Program-made: the position numbers and the translations under genes
The notes under the pieces: model-generated
Database searches by the model: none
The model's input: the letters and a program-made list of their open reading frames with translations, nothing else
What the model was told of the DNA's origin: nothing
Part shown: positions 2,909 through 9,138 of the stretch, piece after piece
How the letters are laid out: the number at the start of each line of letters is the position of its first letter
Numbering within the stretch: the first letter of the stretch is position 1
Origin: Guillardia theta CCMP2712
Taxonomy: Eukaryota > Protista > Cryptophyta
NCBI RefSeq assembly: GCF_000315625.1
Contig: NW_005434595.1
Location: 62,001 to 126,000, forward strand
DNA: 64,000 nt
Direction of reading: 5' to 3'

Positions 2909-4296
2909 ATGGAAGAAGGTATGATTCCCTTGTATCCTCTGCTGTGGAGGAAGCATGACACATTTTCTGTCCTATTCACTCCCTCCTCCAGCCCCTCTGT
3001 TTCCTCCCTCCCCCTGTCCCTCTGTTTCCTCCCTCCCCCTCCCTTTATGTTTCCTCACCTCCAACGGTCCCCCTTCATTACCCCCTGTTTTTCTCTTTGC
3101 CATCCACCTCTCCTCGATTCTTCTAACATGCACTGCAGATCATTCCGTGCATCTGCTATGCCTTGTCTTCCATCTACATGACACTTGCACAGAAGTATGT
3201 TGTCATCAACGCTTCCGAAGTCAAGGCTCTTTTTCTCTTCTACCAGAACGCCGCAGCCTTGCTGATGTTCCTCCCGACCTCTCTCGGCCTCCTTCAACGG
3301 TTCCACATCCTCCCCTACACCTTTTGGGACACTCGCGCGGCTTTTTCTGTCCTCCCCCTTGGTATCACCTACTCCATCATGCTCTACAGCTCCAACTGGG
3401 CTCTTTCCCTCTTGACGGTCCCCATGGTCTCAGTCCTGAAGAACATCGGCCCTGTAGTTATCACTCTCTTCGAATCTTGGACGGAGGGAAAGGAAGTTTC
3501 TATCAGCGTCTTCCTCTCCCTGCTGATGCTGGTGTCCGGCGGGCTGGTGGCAGCGTATAACGACCTGATGTTTGACGGCTGGGGTTATTTGCTCATGTTC
3601 TTCAACGTGCTTACCAACGTGGTGCATGTGAATCTGACGAAGAGGATGAGGAGTTTGTCTATCAGAAAGGAGGTTGTCCTGCACTATCAGTCGATCTTTA
3701 TGTGCATTTTCCTCCTCCCCGAGCTCATGAACCAGGACCTTAATGTCATTGTCAACGGTTTGCGGGATCAGCCACTTGTGGTTCAGATGGCGTTCTTCTC
3801 GACTGGAGTGAACGGGATCGTGATCGCACTTTGTACCATGTGGTGCATCGAGGCGACTTCTGGCAGCACCTACTCCATGGTGGGAGCTCTGAACAAGATC
3901 CCGTCCTCGATCCTTGGAATATTCATCTTCAGGTCTGCTGTGTGACATGGCTGTGGTTGCATCGGCTCGTTTGTCTGCTGTGTGACATGGCTGTGGTTGC
4001 CTCGGCTCGTTTGTCAGCATACAGTTGTGTGTTGGACACGTTTAGATTATCATCATTGTTATTGATGTGCATGCTTGTGATGTTGGAAGGTTAAAGTCTG
4101 GTGACGTCATTGCAGAAATCCTGTTAGCGTCCTAAACTTGGTTGGAGTTGGAATTGGGCTGATTGGAGGAGTTGTGTTCAGGTGAGGAGAGGAGTTGTGT
4201 GGATGGTACGAGAAGTCAGTTGCGATCCTGACGTGTGTTTGCAGTCTGGACAAGCAGATTTCTGCGAGAATAAACCGCTGGAGAAAGTTGGAGTGA
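2909..4296 (+). CDS. GDP-mannose/GDP-sugar transporter (VRG4/GONST-like, DMT superfamily)
   Basis: Multi-TM ORF 3163-3945 with CYALSSIYMTLAQKYVV, LLTVPMVSVLKNI and STYSMVGALNKIP (the GALNK GDP-binding motif). Downstream exon NPVSVLNLVGVGIGLIGGVVF. Start and end are approximate. Confidence 0.88.
3933..4012 (+). repeat. 40-bp tandem duplication at an intron 5' end
   Basis: gtctgctgtgtgacatggctgtggttgc(a/c)tcggctcgttt occurs twice (3933-3972, 3973-4012) with one mismatch. Confidence 0.95.
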
Positions 4297-4639
4297 GGAG
4301 GAGGACCGTGGAGGGGATGAAATAGGATCATAGCAATGAATGGGAACCCCCGATCAACGGTGATACGAGTGGAATGTATGCAGAACACAGGCAACGACAA
4401 GATCTTGTGGTACATTTTATTAGTTGGGAACCTAGAAATCACATGCCTGGAAATACAAACTCGCCGTTCACTTTGCTAGCTGCTCTTCTCTTAACGCTTC
4501 CGTTCTCCCTCGCCTTGCTGCTGCTACTGTTGGGTTCGATTTGACTCATTATGTTTGATGTCAGATCTTGGAAACCTTTGTTGAAGAGACTGCAACAACA
4601 AATCATCACCCATTTCAAACCTGCAAGTCCATGCAAGTC

Positions 4640-7466
4640 AATTTACCCAAAGATATCTTCTTCCTCCTGGCCTGTTGTCATTCTGTCAGAAAAAAACATG
4701 AAAGACATCCAAACAGCTTTCTGACCTGCAGGTTCTAAAAGTAGGCCCTTTGATCTCGCAGAGCTGCGCAACTTAGTCAAACTTCATCTGTGAGGAATGG
4801 AACCTATTCACTTTAAGATGTTCGCCTCAATCTCCGACAGCTGTCGAGAAAGTTTGGACAGCTTCTGATGGACTTCGTGCTGGTCCTGTGGGAAGGGAGA
4901 GGAGAGAAAAGCAGTGTTAACACAACCCAACTTGAGACAGATGAAACTTCAGACCTCGTCACCGTCACTCTCAACCTGCTCTTGGTTGCAGTCCGTCTCG
5001 ATGTATTCGAACGATCTGATGCAGAGATCGGAAATGTCAAGACCCATAACATGACGATCTTCAACTTACATCCTCGGCTCTTCCTCTTCTTCCTCCTCCT
5101 CCTCCTCCTCTGCTTGCGCTTGTTGCTCCTGACATCACCCTCAATGGTCAACGTTCTCGTCTCCACTTTCGATGCTCCACCTTGAACTCCTTGCTGGCAA
5201 GGAAAGGGAAGGTACGGAAGAAGAACAATTCGATCTGATTGTAAAAGAAGACGACGATACCTTGTGCATCTTTTCAAAACATGGAAGGCAAACATCCAAG
5301 ACAAGAATCATCATCATAATCATCATCATCATCACCATCACCACCACCACCACCACCACCTCACCAATCACGTAGATGCCCATGACGATGATGACGAGCC
5401 CGAGAACGTTCACGACGTCCAGCACGTTTGCAGCAGAGGCGGCGGCAGAGCACTGAAGATTCCCGATCTCGGGGATGTACTTGTGTTCCAACATGCTGAT
5501 CACCCCGGACTTGCGCTGCTCCAGCAGGACCTGAGAAAGTGGAAAGTGCCATGGCAGCCTGCTCGACCCCAGCTGGCCCTTGTCGGCCCGGAAACCCACC
5601 CCATACCCAAAGGGCTTGAAGGCATCTCCCACGAGCACCAGCTCCCCCCACACCGGGGTCCACTGGTTCCCCGTGCTGACGCAAGTTTGCGGGGTCCCAG
5701 TAGCGTCTGCTGAGGCAGAGGAGCAGAGGCAGGAGGCCTCGTCAGTGTAGGAAGGGTCTGAGCAGAAGCCTCCCGGGCTGCCGCAGAGGCCTTTAGCATA
5801 GAAGTCTTGCGCTATGCTGTCAAGCACGACAGGCCCATCGTAGAAGGTGCAATCAGCATCCTCTCGGTACACCATCATCAGGCAGTCCATAAGGGAGGGG
5901 GCGGGGATCGAGATGAACTTGGCGGAGGGGAACTTGGAGCTTTCAGAGTCGAGATAGGCCTTGACTGAGATGTCGGAAGTGAGGTAGCAGACGCGGGTGG
6001 TCGGGCGGTACTTGGCGGATCTAGTGTCAAAGAGGTCCTCTACCCTATCGAGAGCCGTTTCCGTGTTGATGTTGGCCAGGAAGCTGGCGAGGTTGCCGGT
6101 GTAGACGGCCTGCAGGATGATAGCAAAGATCAGCTGACCCATGAACAATGTCCGCCCTGGGTTCGTCTCCATGACCAGGTCCGCCGCTCCGAGAATGACG
6201 CTGAACGACCAGTAGATTGACGTCTGAATCTCCTTGAACAGCCTGCTAGGGATCGACTCGTTCTTCCCATTGCCCTCGCTGACGATCAGGCAGGCGGCAG
6301 CTACCAGCACCTCAATGAGGATGCAGATCCACAGCACGTAGGAGAAGGGCTGCGCCCATGCCATGAGGTCTGCCGGTACTTCCTTCTTCTTGACCACCAG
6401 TCGGAAACCTCTTGACATGTACCCAACGGTCATGTCAAAGTTCGTCAGGCGGGTATTCACGATCTTGTGCGCCCCTGCGGTCAGGCATTGGTTGTTGGGG
6501 CAAAGAACCTCGTCGTCGACCACTCCCGTCACGTTGTTGAACTTCGACCCTCCGAAGAACGATCCCTCCACCTGCACACACCCTCCCTCTGATATCCCTC
6601 CGCACCCCAGCCGAAAGTCGCCAGCTGGGCAGGTCGAGCACGCTACACACTCACCCTGTGAACCTCCAGAGCATCCTTTCCTCCAGGTCCCTTGAGGGCA
6701 GGGAGAGTCCAGACAAGACAGGCAAGAGGTCGCATACGTAGAGTTGTCTGTGTTGTAGGTGGCAGTAGGGCAGCTCTTGCAGGTTCCCGGCTGATCTCCT
6801 CCACACCCAGCTCGGTAGAAACCCGACGGGCAAGGAGCGCAGCCGACACAGGAGACGTTCTCGCCAGTTGTAATGTACTGAGTGCTAGAGCAGGAAAGGC
6901 TCGTCTGTACGATCTTCATGCACAACCTGTCCTGAGTAGTTGTGCAGCCCTTCACTTCTACCGGGGTCGCTCCCGAGCAGGGGGCCGAGCACGGAGCACA
7001 ATGGTCCCTGTAGTCGTAGGTGGACGCGGTGGTGTTGGCAGGGCAGCTGACACACTGTCCAGGGCTGAGGTTGGAGCATCCAACACGGTACATGCCAGGA
7101 GCACAGACGTCGCATCGCACACAGAACCCGAGCTCCTGGTTGCCACAGCCCTTGCGATAGAACCCGGCAGGACAGGCGTCGGCCTTACACTCAGAGCTCT
7201 CTCCCAGCATCTGGAAGGCCAGGTCCGGCGATGGCTGTGAGCAGACGCCCGAGCTGTAAAACTCTGAGCGCAGGCAGGGGTACAGGAAGCGAAAGCTGCA
7301 GCCCAGCTCCTTGGAGAGCGTGTCGAAGAGCTCCATGGTGAGCCCGGAGAGCCTCCCGTTGCCGTACGTCCGTCTGCATGCGGGAAGTGTCAGGCCAGGG
7401 AGAGAGACGAGAAAAAGAAGAAGATGAAAAGGGAGGGAGCGACGAGAACAGAGGGGAGGAGAGAGA

Positions 7467-7538
<72 letters not shown>

Positions 7539-8070
7539 GAGGAGGGAGGGAGGGAGGGAGGGAGAGGGAGAGGGAGAGGGAGAGGGAGAGGGAGAGAGAG
7601 CGAAGAAGAGATGAGAAACAAGCAGAAGGAGCAATGACAAGAAGAAGATAACGTGAAGACACATGTAAGTTTGGTTGCTATTACGATTGATTGGTGTTGC
7701 CCGGATCGCCATTGAGCGCTTCGAAGTCATCTATCACAACGAATGGTGGAACATGGTAGGTAATGACGACAAAAGTTTTCCCTCTGAAAGGATTTGTCGT
7801 CGGGCTAGTATAATCTATTCCCAACGGCCAGGAGTAGGTGCTGGAAAGTATACCACGGTAAAAGATAGAGAATCTTACAGCTGCGGGTTCACCTGACTTC
7901 CCTCACATTGAGGAAGGAGTCCATGGGGAGCGCGTGAGAGTCATGGCCGAAGAAACCTCTCGATGCATCGGAAACTGGATGACGTTAATCAGAGACGTAC
8001 AGGGGTCGAAATGGTGCATACCTTGAGCGAACAGGATAAAGAGAATGGTCGAATAAAACATCTCCCTCAT
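4640..8070 (-). CDS. Ionotropic glutamate receptor-like channel (S1-M1-P-M3-S2-M4) with Cys-rich insertions and no recognisable ATD
   Basis: S1 start KTFVVITYHVPPFV (~7730-7780), LSGLTMELFDTLSKELG, NTRLTNFDMTVGYMSRGFRLVVKK, M1 QPFSYVLWICIL, pore SIYWSFSVILG, M3 AVYTGNLASFL (SYTANLAAF-like), S2 GYGVGF, M4 VLGLVIIVMGIYVIG. Termini are approximate. Confidence 0.88.
7450..7600. repeat. (GA)n/(GAGGGA)n intronic microsatellite
   Basis: Direct read; lies in an intron of the iGluR-like gene. Confidence 0.95.
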
Positions 8071-8862
8071 TGACATGGTAGCCAGTGTGTGAGTTTCCTC
8101 ATCAATTGCCTGGATCTGCGAAGAAGCATTACCAAGACACGTGGACAAACGTCTTGCGTCAATGTTGATGTTTGGAAGCTGTGCGTGTTACGACAAGATA
8201 TAAGAGACGTATTCCATGAAAGAGCACAGCGCAGAGGAAGAGCAGATAGGATGGATGGGAAGAAGGACGAATATCTTCTAAAAGACCAATCGGGAAAGAA
8301 GTCGTTCGGCAAATTCTTCACAAGGAAGGAAACAGAAGAGGCAAAAGCAAACATGCAGGGAGGGGAGAGAAGGAGAGCCTGAGAGACGGGGAGGGAGAAC
8401 TGTGGGCAAGGATAGTGAGGAGAACAACAAGGAAGAGGAGGGAGGGAGAGGGAGGGAGAGGGAGGGAGAGGGAGGGAGGGAGAAAGGGAAGGGAACGATA
8501 CAAGGTCCCTCCATAGCGAGGAGGTAAATTCGTCAATGGGCCATCAGATATGGGGGTCGTTGGGTGGTTTTGAACCCCTTGCTTTCCCCTGAAAATGATA
8601 GTAAAAGCGGGTGAGTACTGTGAAAGGGTGGGGTAGATTGACAAGTTTGAAAGGGGTAGTTAAAATATCCGTTACGACATCTGGACTTCAAGTAACGGTC
8701 TCTTGCTTCGGATTTTGAAAAGAGCTCAGGGGGTGGTGGTCTTTGAGTACCCCTACTTTGAAATTGTAAAAGGGGGGTGATATTGATACGGAAGGGGTGG
8801 AGTGTCCGATCTATGCGAACTGGCCCGACAGTGATGTTGAACGACATGATGACGAGGGTAAG

Positions 8863-8912
8863 GAGCAGGAGCAAGAGCAGGAGCAGGAGCAGGAGCAGGG
8901 GCAGGAGCAGGG

Positions 8913-8989
<77 letters not shown>

Positions 8990-9002
8990 GGCAGGAGCAG
9001 GG

Positions 9003-9093
<91 letters not shown>
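8863..9093. repeat. (GAGCAG)n hexamer microsatellite
   Basis: About 38 units with occasional GGGCAG variants; it produces the poly-L, RS, EQ and CS ORFs. Confidence 0.97.
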
Positions 9094-9094
<1 letters not shown>

Positions 9095-9138
9095 ATGTAC
9101 TTAGCAAGAGATAGGAACCGAGAGTTGTAGATCACTCA

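What the first reader, a model, noticed from the sequence alone, without database searches (positions are those of the whole stretch)
5660..7260. iGluR-like channel with TNFR-like Cys-rich modules spliced inside the ligand-binding domain
Seen: between the S1 helix (ELFDTLSKELG) and the ligand-Arg segment (NTRLTNFDMT) lie ~230 aa (~6490-7190) of repeated CPxGxYRxGCxGxxxGxCxxC units. A second Cys cluster (CGSPGGFCSDPSYTDEASCLC...CVSTGNQW) sits in S2. No ATD precedes S1. Established: animal iGluRs and plant GLRs have only short loops at these positions. Inference: a channel whose clamshell carries a rod-like extracellular module, so gating could be coupled to protein or surface contact or to mechanical force. 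The M3 variant VYTGNLASF and pore FSVILGA are also atypical.
Basis: partly seen in the sequence, partly recalled or inferred. Interest (0 to 1): 0.8.

Follow-up and report, generated by a model that had tools for sequence, protein, structure and literature searches.

The report
Glutamate-receptor-like channel with nested TNFR-like stalk
A gene of the alga Guillardia theta encodes a glutamate-receptor-type ion channel that has no N-terminal domain but carries a 205-residue cysteine-rich, TNF-receptor-like stalk inserted in the upper lobe of its ligand-binding domain, an arrangement found so far in only one small clade and not found described in the papers searched.

Summary
The minus strand of the window (Guillardia theta CCMP2712, GUITHDRAFT_114856) holds one 2,007-nt open exon (5366-7372). 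It encodes the S1 helix, five CPxGxYRxGC units with 30 Cys (window 6578-7189), the ligand-Arg segment, M1-M3, S2 with a second Cys cluster, and M4.

- **Channel core.** It matches Pfam Lig_chan, solved GluN1/GluD2/AMPA receptors by sequence, and their LBD-TMD folds by structure.
- **Insert.** Alone it passes Pfam TNFR_c6, and its model matches only TNFR-family ectodomains.
- **No ATD.** A signal-peptide exon and a short S1 exon precede the main exon. The public model's exon 2 is wrong.
- **Relatives.** They are few: 268 hits among 1.84 billion representatives. Eight relatives whose S1 is seen have 20-45 residues at the insertion site.
- **Same insert elsewhere.** Two other sequences, one metagenome contig and one run assembly, carry it at the same site. 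They group with this gene in a well-supported clade, so it is coding and inherited.
- **S2 Cys cluster.** It is family-wide, not special to this gene.

The gating idea (contact or force) is untested. I read the stalk as an ATD-like interaction or modulation module on lobe D1. The scan had no earlier finding of this on other DNA.

The parts
8023..8076 (-). Exon 1: start codon and hydrophobic signal peptide (18 aa), followed by a GT donor
   Evidence: sequence; residues 1-18 of the public model P0001 map here at 100%.
7685..7814 (-). Exon 2 (revised model): first S1 beta-strand and the DPGN..N motif. The public model P0001 uses a different exon at 7886-7975.
   Evidence: frame; 59% identity over 46 aa to P0004, E 3e-14. 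The same block is present in all full-length relatives. AG acceptor and GT donor are in phase with exons 1 and 3 (read by eye).
7374..7684 (-). Intron 2 with a long CT microsatellite.
7190..7373 (-). Start of the main exon: S1 hairpin, S1 helix (ELFDTLSKELG), strand, the conserved YPC..C pair and a short helix ending in QML
   Evidence: E2-9, H11-23, E27-30, H35-41, H49-54.
6578..7189 (-). Nested Cys-rich module: 204 aa from the first to the last Cys, 30 Cys, five CPxGxYRxGC units plus a central TNFR-like stretch, and four N-glycosylation sequons
   Evidence: (TNFR_c6 34.7 bits, above the cut-off), (Atlas nearest clusters are TNFR_c6/Ephrin_rec_like, 0.93; model matches TNFR-family ectodomains; collinear with L013; sequons).
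6380..6577 (-). Post-insert loop (FFGG, CPNNQC pair) and S1b: the strand leading to the binding site, Arg308 (NTR), and the strand into lobe D2
   Evidence: Arg aligned with the Arg of GluD2; FFGG block aligned with WNGM of GluN1, moderate posterior; E296-303, H306-309, E319-331.
6074..6340 (-). M1, re-entrant M2 pore helix (YWSFSVILGAAD) and M3 with the gate motif VYTGNLASF
   Evidence: Lig_chan; H345-366, H378-394, H404-433, pLDDT above 90.
5417..6073 (-). S2 half of the ligand-binding domain, with Asp512 (TFYD) and the canonical S2 disulfide pair (Cys530, Cys641)
   Evidence: the YD of the profile aligned with the WD of GluN1. The Cys530/Cys641 assignment is read by eye from the sequence, not from an alignment..
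5681..5785 (-). S2 Cys cluster (CGSPGGFC...C.C...C), a loop shared by the whole clade
   Evidence: Also present in G. theta paralogues L002 and L003 and in P0004, P0005, P0006 and P0009.
5365..5416 (-). First part of M4, interrupted by a GT intron that holds a GGT/GAT microsatellite
   Evidence: (H653-668; P0001 continues M4 in the next exon).
4442..5300 (-). Downstream exons: rest of M4 and the cytoplasmic tail up to the stop of the public model. The tail motifs are shared with L014, P0180 and P0181.
   Evidence: (P0001 maps down to 4442).

Best explanation
This is a real nuclear gene of Guillardia theta for a subunit of an iGluR-type, presumably tetrameric, ligand-gated cation channel. The subunit has a signal peptide, S1, M1, a re-entrant M2, M3, S2 and M4, and no amino-terminal domain.

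It belongs to a small, divergent clade known only from marine protist transcriptomes and metagenomes. In one orthologous group of that clade, a surface loop of the upper lobe (D1) has taken up a module of about 205 residues. The loop lies between the first S1 helix/strand and the strand that carries the ligand-binding Arg, and it is already variable in relatives. The module is built of five TNFR/ephrin-receptor-like Cys-rich units, with up to 15 possible disulfides and four N-glycosylation sequons.

- **Shown:** the architecture, its coding nature, its inheritance, the iGluR fold of the core, the TNFR-like fold of the insert, and retention of the canonical Arg (R308), the S2 Asp (D512) and the YTxNLAxF gate.
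- **Inferred:** the channel still opens on an amino-acid-like ligand closing the clamshell.
- **Inferred:** the four stiff glycosylated stalks stand on the D1 lobes. There they would act as an ATD-like layer that binds a partner or helps assembly and trafficking, and would modulate rather than drive gating.
For: **Identity.** The exon is 100% identical to GUITHDRAFT_114856.

**Core.**
- Lig_chan above its cut-off.
- phmmer against PDB: GluD2 and GluN1 at 4e-11, with Arg aligned to Arg.
- Family profile against PDB: GluN1 5e-28 and plant GLR3.4 2.4e-25, with the S2 Asp aligned.
- AF2 core pLDDT above 90 with M1-M4 helices. Foldseek top hits are NMDA/AMPA LBD-TMD chains, E about 1e-16.

**Insert.**
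- TNFR_c6 34.7 bits. Atlas neighbours are TNFR_c6/Ephrin_rec_like, 0.93.
- AF2 of the insert has mean pLDDT 77 with beta-hairpin repeats.
- Of the hits listed, all but one (a calcium-sensing-receptor chain) are TNFR-family ectodomains.

**Real insertion.** Eight relatives have only 20-45 residues at the site. G. theta paralogues L002 and L003 have no room for it.

**Inherited and coding.**
- L013 has the same module with both junctions conserved: 48% over 97 aa including the ML..EC junction, and 34% over 177 aa into S1b.
- L014 has repeats running straight into S1b in one unbroken 1,866-nt frame.
- The three group with two N-truncated fragments in a clade with SH-aLRT 99.
- Only the coding frame of the insert is stop-free.

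**Rarity.** 268 relatives among 1.84e9 representatives. Only 1 of 64 long homologues, this protein itself, has TNFR_c6.
Against: - An in-frame alternative splice that skips the insert is therefore not excluded; 10 in-frame GT..AG pairs exist.
- The insert was not modelled in the context of the whole subunit (pLDDT below 50). Its orientation is inferred from topology, not seen.
- The exact site relative to animal helix C is uncertain. HMMER aligns the post-insert FFGG with WNGM of GluN1 at only moderate posterior.
- The residue at the T480-equivalent position is Lys, and several relatives lack the Arg. Amino-acid gating is not assured.
- Foldseek E-values for the insert are modest (6e-4 and weaker).
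- No partner, ligand or localisation is known.
Confidence: 0.55

Rival explanations
1. The stalk is mainly a folding, ER-export or surface-stability element: a glycosylated, disulfide-rich spacer with no specific partner. This would resemble the N-glycosylated co-receptor extra loop of insect IR8a/IR25a, which is needed for ER exit.
For: The insert has four N-glycosylation sequons. The site is a permissive loop that also takes unrelated 20-aa acidic insertions in P0013 and P0018. There is a precedent for an LBD insertion with a trafficking role (PMC6472016).
Against: About 205 residues in five ordered units, conserved in order between diverged orthologues, is much more than a glycan carrier needs. 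TNFR-type modules are typically binding modules.
Confidence: 0.2
2. One reading: the stalk couples gating to contact with a protein or surface, or to mechanical force.
For: The stalk is predicted as a stiff repeat of disulfide-bonded hairpins. It is anchored by two nearby chain ends in the clamshell's upper lobe.
Against: There is no direct evidence. The anchor is in D1, not in D2 or the LBD-TMD linkers that pull on M3 in solved receptors (established knowledge of AMPA and NMDA receptor gating). The canonical ligand residues R308 and D512 are kept, which fits ordinary ligand gating.
Confidence: 0.1
3. The insert is removed from the mature mRNA, constitutively or in the main isoform, so the protein is an ordinary member of its clade.
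For: No reads could be laid. In-frame GT..AG pairs spanning the insert exist. GC3 of the insert (0.65) is lower than that of the flanks (0.78-0.89).
Against: The insert is a stop-free frame that encodes a recognisable domain. The same module with conserved junctions occurs in L013 and L014 at 34-48% identity, which intron sequence would not keep. L014 is one unbroken frame from repeats to stop, across positions where both G. theta and L013 have introns. This suggests, but does not prove, a spliced transcript.
Confidence: 0.07
4. The protein no longer works as a ligand-gated channel. It would be a receptor-like or adhesion protein that uses the iGluR scaffold only to display the stalk.
For: The pocket is divergent: Lys sits at the T480-equivalent position, Pfam's Lig_chan-Glu_bd and SBP_bac_3 models do not match it, and several clade members lack the Arg.
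Against: The pore helix, the M3 gate motif, R308, D512 and the S2 disulfide are kept and modelled with pLDDT above 90.
Confidence: 0.08

Closest known systems
Animal ionotropic glutamate receptors (GluN1, GluD2, AMPA GluA2) and plant GLR3.4
   Same: S1-M1-M2(pore loop)-M3-S2-M4 order. A YTxNLAxF gate, the S1 Arg and the S2 Asp at the aligned positions. The LBD-TMD fold is the same.
   Different: No amino-terminal domain. A 205-residue TNFR-like module is nested in lobe D1. There are extra Cys pairs in S1 and a Cys-rich loop in S2. Identity is only about 20%, and the Pfam S1 model does not match.
ATD-less iGluR relatives: bacterial GluR0-type channels and insect 'tuning' IRs
   Same: The ligand-binding domain sits directly behind the signal peptide or N-terminus, with no ATD layer.
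   Different: Those have no nested domain. The pore here is not of the K-channel type: Ion_trans_2 matched 7 other homologues but not this protein.
Co-receptor extra loop (CREL) of insect IR8a/IR25a (PMC6472016)
   Same: A lineage-specific, N-glycosylated insertion inside the ligand-binding domain of an iGluR relative, conserved among orthologues and exposed on the surface.
   Different: CREL is 30-35 residues, lies at the start of S2 and is not an independent domain. The insert here is about 205 residues in S1 and forms a multi-unit Cys-rich domain.
TNFR/NGFR cysteine-rich domains (Pfam PF00020) and Ephrin_rec_like repeats (PF07699) of protist surface proteins
   Same: The Pfam match is above the cut-off on the isolated S1a-plus-insert part. 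The nearest Atlas clusters and the nearest solved folds are TNFR-family ectodomains. The same repeat is abundant in long G. theta ORFs.
   Different: Here the repeat is nested inside another domain instead of forming the N-terminal ectodomain of a single-pass receptor. Nothing suggests a TNF-like ligand.
Class C GPCRs (mGluR, CaSR): Venus-flytrap sensor plus Cys-rich domain (NCD3G)
   Same: A periplasmic-binding-protein-type sensor is combined with a stiff Cys-rich rod. NCD3G appears among the Atlas neighbours and a CaSR chain among the fold hits.
   Different: There the rod lies in series between the sensor and the membrane domain and transmits the signal. Here it is a side branch on the upper lobe of the sensor.

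Membership tests
Ionotropic glutamate receptor superfamily (iGluR/GLR) | Pfam Lig_chan (PF00060) match above the gathering score | tested here: met
   42.9-46.2 bits against a cut-off of 30.8.
Ionotropic glutamate receptor superfamily (iGluR/GLR) | Bilobed S1/S2 ligand-binding domain interrupted by M1-M2(re-entrant)-M3 and followed by M4 | tested here: met
   AF2 core pLDDT above 90 with helices at 345-366, 378-394, 404-433 and 653-668. Foldseek top hits are NMDA/AMPA LBD-TMD chains, E about 1e-16, about 380 aligned columns.
Ionotropic glutamate receptor superfamily (iGluR/GLR) | SYTANLAAF gate motif in M3 | tested here: met
   VYTGNLASF has 6 of 9 positions identical and is aligned to the motif in GluD2. 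Ser at position 8 also occurs in plant GLRs (from memory, not tested).
Ionotropic glutamate receptor superfamily (iGluR/GLR) | S1 Arg that binds the ligand's alpha-carboxylate and S2 acidic residue that binds its amino group | tested here: met
   R308 aligns with the Arg of GluD2. The YD of the family profile (D512 here) aligns with the WD of GluN1. This is alignment only, and the neighbouring T480-equivalent position is Lys.
Ionotropic glutamate receptor superfamily (iGluR/GLR) | Ligand-gated cation current from a tetramer | not testable with these tools
   Needs expression and electrophysiology.
Ionotropic glutamate receptor superfamily (iGluR/GLR) | Amino-terminal domain (ANF_receptor). This is typical of animal and plant members but does not define the superfamily. 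| tested here: not met
   There is no ANF_receptor match. Signal-peptide exon 1 is followed after about 210 nt by the first S1 strand.
TNFR/NGFR cysteine-rich region (PF00020) | Pfam match above the gathering score | tested here: inconclusive
   34.7 bits against 29.4, in 4 stretches, on the S1a-plus-insert part alone. Only 20.1-20.3 bits on the whole protein.
TNFR/NGFR cysteine-rich region (PF00020) | Elongated ladder of disulfide-bonded hairpin modules, as in solved TNFR ectodomains | tested here: met
   AF2 of the insert: mean pLDDT 77, 81-96 outside residues 56-97. Apart from one calcium-sensing-receptor chain, the listed Foldseek hits are TNFR-family ectodomains, most with probability 0.9-1.0, but E is only 6e-4 to 3e-2 and TM about 0.3.
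TNFR/NGFR cysteine-rich region (PF00020) | Binding of a TNF-like trimeric ligand | not testable with these tools
   No ligand is known and none was looked for.

The most novel reading that the evidence does not exclude
The stalk is a receptor for a macromolecular or particulate cue, such as a cell-surface or periplast component, prey, a mate, or a viral or bacterial surface. Its occupancy would then change the LBD layer enough to gate or license the channel. That would make this clade a contact-sensing ionotropic receptor: a channel that integrates a small-molecule ligand in the cleft with a protein ligand on a nested domain.
Probability: 0.12. Interest if true: 0.85.

Novelty: new variant of a known kind. 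Interest (0 to 1): 0.55.

Why it matters
Ionotropic glutamate receptors are thought of as stacked layers: ATD, LBD and pore. Known lineage-specific changes inside the LBD are short loops, such as NMDA loop 1 and the insect CREL.

Here a whole foreign domain is nested in the clamshell of an ATD-less receptor and has been kept across diverged orthologues. This shows that lobe D1 tolerates a large domain insertion. It also suggests a second evolutionary route to an extracellular regulatory layer.

It gives a natural construct, with and without the stalk, for asking how far the upper lobe can influence assembly, trafficking and gating. It also points to an unstudied family of sensory channels in cryptophyte-like algae. 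Finally, it corrects the public gene model, which lacks the first S1 strand.

Tried and rejected
- **Word-based protein searches.** Searches with the exon and with its channel part found only the protein itself and Cys-repeat proteins. The exhaustive search was therefore needed.
- **phmmer of the insert against PDB.** No hit.
- **AF2 of the whole exon.** It did not model the insert (pLDDT below 50). I folded the insert separately with an alignment of repeat windows.
- **Arg idea rejected.** My early idea was that only insert-bearing members keep the ligand Arg. On re-reading alignment A1, P0013, P0018 and P0036 also have it.
- **Taxon of L013.** I tried to place it through its neighbouring ubiquitin-domain gene. 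That gene is only 35-37% identical to G. theta, so this is inconclusive.
- **Accession numbers in papers.** None found.
- **Paper searches.** Searches for a described iGluR with a Cys-rich LBD insert or for cryptophyte iGluRs found none. The library lacks most subscription journals.
- **Giant homologues.** P0022, P0026 and P0029 look like merged tandem genes, not a related architecture.
- **Joined model.** Exons were used one by one by reference.
Full report
**What is there.**
- The window is Guillardia theta CCMP2712 nuclear DNA. The translated exon is 100% identical to GUITHDRAFT_114856, P0001.
- On the minus strand an 826-codon open frame (5141-7621) holds a 669-codon exon, window:5366-7372:-. 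It is bounded by an AG acceptor and a GT donor.
- In order, the exon encodes:
  - the S1 hairpin and helix;
  - a stretch with 30 Cys between residues 62 and 265 (window 6578-7189), with five CPxGx[YWF]RxGC units;
  - a loop with FFGG and a CPNNQC pair;
  - the strand and Arg of the NTR segment (R308);
  - M1, pore helix M2 and M3 (VYTGNLASF);
  - S2, with a second Cys cluster at residues 530-564 (window 5681-5785);
  - the start of M4.
- Only the coding frame of the insert is stop-free. 32 of 20,000 shuffles of the insert, and 0 of 5,000 shuffles of the whole exon, were stop-free.

**Gene model.**
- Exon 1 (8023-8076) is a signal peptide.
- The public model P0001 then uses an exon at 7886-7975 that has no counterpart in any relative.
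- In another frame, 7685-7814 encodes the first S1 strand and a DPGN..N motif. This block is 59% identical to relative P0004 (E 3e-14) and is present in all full-length relatives. Its acceptor and donor are in phase with exons 1 and 3 (read by eye).
- So S1 follows the signal peptide directly and there is no ATD. The public model lacks the first S1 strand.
- Intron 2 (7374-7684) holds a CT microsatellite. M4 is split by a further intron, and the tail runs on to about 4442.
Exons were used by reference.

**The core is an iGluR.**
- Lig_chan is above its cut-off.
- The channel part matches solved GluD2, GluN1 and AMPA receptors by sequence (4e-11 and weaker), with R308 on the conserved Arg and the M3 motifs aligned.
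- A profile of the clade matches GluN1 at 5e-28 and plant GLR3.4 at 2.4e-25. The S2 Asp (D512, TFYD) falls on the Asp in the WD of GluN1.
- AlphaFold2 with 149 homologues gives pLDDT above 90 for the LBD and M1-M4.
- Foldseek returns NMDA and AMPA LBD-TMD chains at about 1e-16 over about 380 columns.

**The family is small and the insert is a true insertion.**
- The exhaustive search found 268 relatives at E<=1e-3 among 1.84 billion representatives, and 11 at <=1e-30.
- The sources recorded are MMETSP transcripts, JGI and ENA metagenomes and Logan assemblies. The tools give no taxon for them.
- Eight relatives whose S1 is seen (P0004, P0005, P0006, P0008, P0009, P0013, P0018, P0036) have 20-45 residues between the helix ending in ..AL.ML and the ..GG...C.D.RC block.
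- P0013 and P0018 carry an unrelated acidic 20-mer at that site, so it is a permissive loop.
- G. theta paralogues on contigs C120 and C135 have no room for the module. They do share the S2 Cys cluster.
- Of 64 long homologues scanned with Pfam, all have Lig_chan and 22 have an ATD. Only this protein has TNFR_c6.

**The insert is inherited, hence coding.**
- Contig L013 (ENA metagenome; P0011 cluster of 7 members) has the S1 exon, then a Cys-rich exon. The start of that exon aligns to the ML..EC junction here (48% over 97 aa, E 1e-21).
- After an intron, L013 has further units running into FGG, the C..N.C pair and S1b (34% over 177 aa). The unit order is the same.
- Contig L014 (Logan assembly of ERR6349632; P0173) is cut at its 5' end. 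It reads two Cys units, then YFGG and CPNNLC, S1b, the channel, S2, M4 and a tail with the same motifs as here, in one unbroken 1,866-nt frame.
- Both G. theta and L013 have introns within that span. L014 is therefore probably a spliced transcript, though I could not verify the library type.
- In a quick maximum-likelihood tree, this gene, L014, P0155 and two N-truncated fragments (P0180, P0181) form a clade with SH-aLRT 99. Insert-less P0005 is sister (quick search only, 24 rows as listed there).
- One gain in the ancestor of this group fits the data.

**What the insert is.**
- On its own it passes TNFR_c6 (34.7 against 29.4 bits, four stretches). On the whole protein it scores below the cut-off.
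- The Atlas feature search puts it next to TNFR_c6/Ephrin_rec_like clusters (0.93, 191 shared features).
- I folded it with 33 repeat windows from G. theta ORFs, P0002, P0003, L013 and L014. Mean pLDDT is 77, and 81-96 outside residues 56-97. The model is a string of beta-hairpins.
- Nearly all of the listed Foldseek hits are TNFR-family ectodomains (DcR3, DR6, TNFR2, HVEM, p75). Most have probability near 1, but E is only 6e-4 to 3e-2 and TM is low, as expected for a flexible rod. A CaSR chain also appears.
- The same repeat fills many long ORFs of the G. theta genome at 33-49% identity, which gives a plausible donor pool.
- The insert has four N-glycosylation sequons.

**Where it sits and how it may work.**
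- The site lies between the strand that follows the first S1 helix and the strand that leads to the binding site.
- HMMER aligns the post-insert FFGG block with WNGM of GluN1, at moderate posterior. This places the insert in the loop-1/helix-C stretch of lobe D1.
- In the periplasmic-binding-protein fold, the strand leading to the binding site runs toward the cleft. Its start, and loop 1, therefore lie on the far side of D1. That is the membrane-distal face, where animal receptors carry the ATD. This follows from established fold knowledge and was not seen in a model, because the insert was not placed with confidence in the full model.
- R308, D512, the S2 disulfide pair and the gate motif are kept. 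I therefore take the channel to be opened by a small ligand in the cleft.
- I take the four stalks to be an ATD-like layer for partner binding, assembly or trafficking that modulates the LBD.
It has no support, and it fits the D1 anchor less well than a D2 or linker anchor would.

**Comparison and novelty.**
- The nearest precedent for a lineage-specific LBD insertion that I could document is the 30-35-residue N-glycosylated CREL of insect IR8a/IR25a, which is needed for ER export (PMC6472016).
- Paper searches for a Cys-rich or TNFR-like domain inside an iGluR LBD, or for cryptophyte iGluRs, found nothing.
- UniRef's automatic name, 'TNFR-Cys domain-containing protein', shows that the domain hit is on record. 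The architecture is not discussed in what I could search.
- I file it as a new variant of a known kind.

**Limits.**
- Those places were sent to no search tool afterwards. Local BLAST used 4000-7440 and 7560-8300 only. No RNA evidence for this gene was obtained.
- The taxa of the relatives are unknown. The neighbour gene of L013 is only 35-37% identical to G. theta.
- The tree is a quick search.
- Function is inferred.

Noticed in passing
window 7685-7975 (minus strand): The public gene model GUITHDRAFT_114856 (P0001) uses an exon at 7886-7975 that no relative supports. It omits the exon at 7685-7814, which encodes the conserved first S1 strand. The deposited protein therefore lacks part of the ligand-binding domain.
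   Followed up: yes
window 5681-5785; L002:1519-2601:+; L003:1489-1959:+: A Cys-rich loop in S2 (CG..GG.C...C.C...C) is shared by this gene, by at least two G. theta paralogues and by most members of the clade. It sits next to the canonical S2 disulfide Cys and adds four Cys.
   Followed up: partly
G000 contigs C120, C135, C85, C195, C29 (L002-L006, L010, L011): G. theta has at least five further ATD-less iGluR-like genes. C195 (L011) belongs to a more distant group and has its own short Cys-containing loop at the S1 site. The gap in S1 of the C85 gene (L006 about 2037-2762) was not resolved.
   Followed up: partly
window 7374-7684, 5300-5364, 8800-9110: Long microsatellites lie in and around the gene: CT repeats in intron 2, GGT/GAT repeats in the M4 intron, and GCTCCT repeats upstream. 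When read through they give long spurious open frames, such as the low-complexity head of the 826-aa ORF.
   Followed up: no
P0013, P0018 (alignment A1, columns about 525-550): Two relatives carry an unrelated acidic insertion of about 20 residues at the same S1 site as the Cys-rich module. The loop seems to be a hot spot for insertions.
   Followed up: no
P0022 (2362 aa), P0026 (1660 aa), P0029 (1884 aa): These distant homologues have 2-5 Lig_chan stretches in one predicted protein. They are most likely tandem GLR genes merged by gene prediction, but true concatenated subunits are not excluded.
   Followed up: partly
G000:C114:234015-236504, C138, C251, C131 (L007, L009, L012, L016-L021): Very long open frames (1,000-1,650 aa) are made of the same CPxGxYRxGC/TNFR-like repeat, so this is a large family of Cys-rich repeat proteins in G. 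theta.
   Followed up: no
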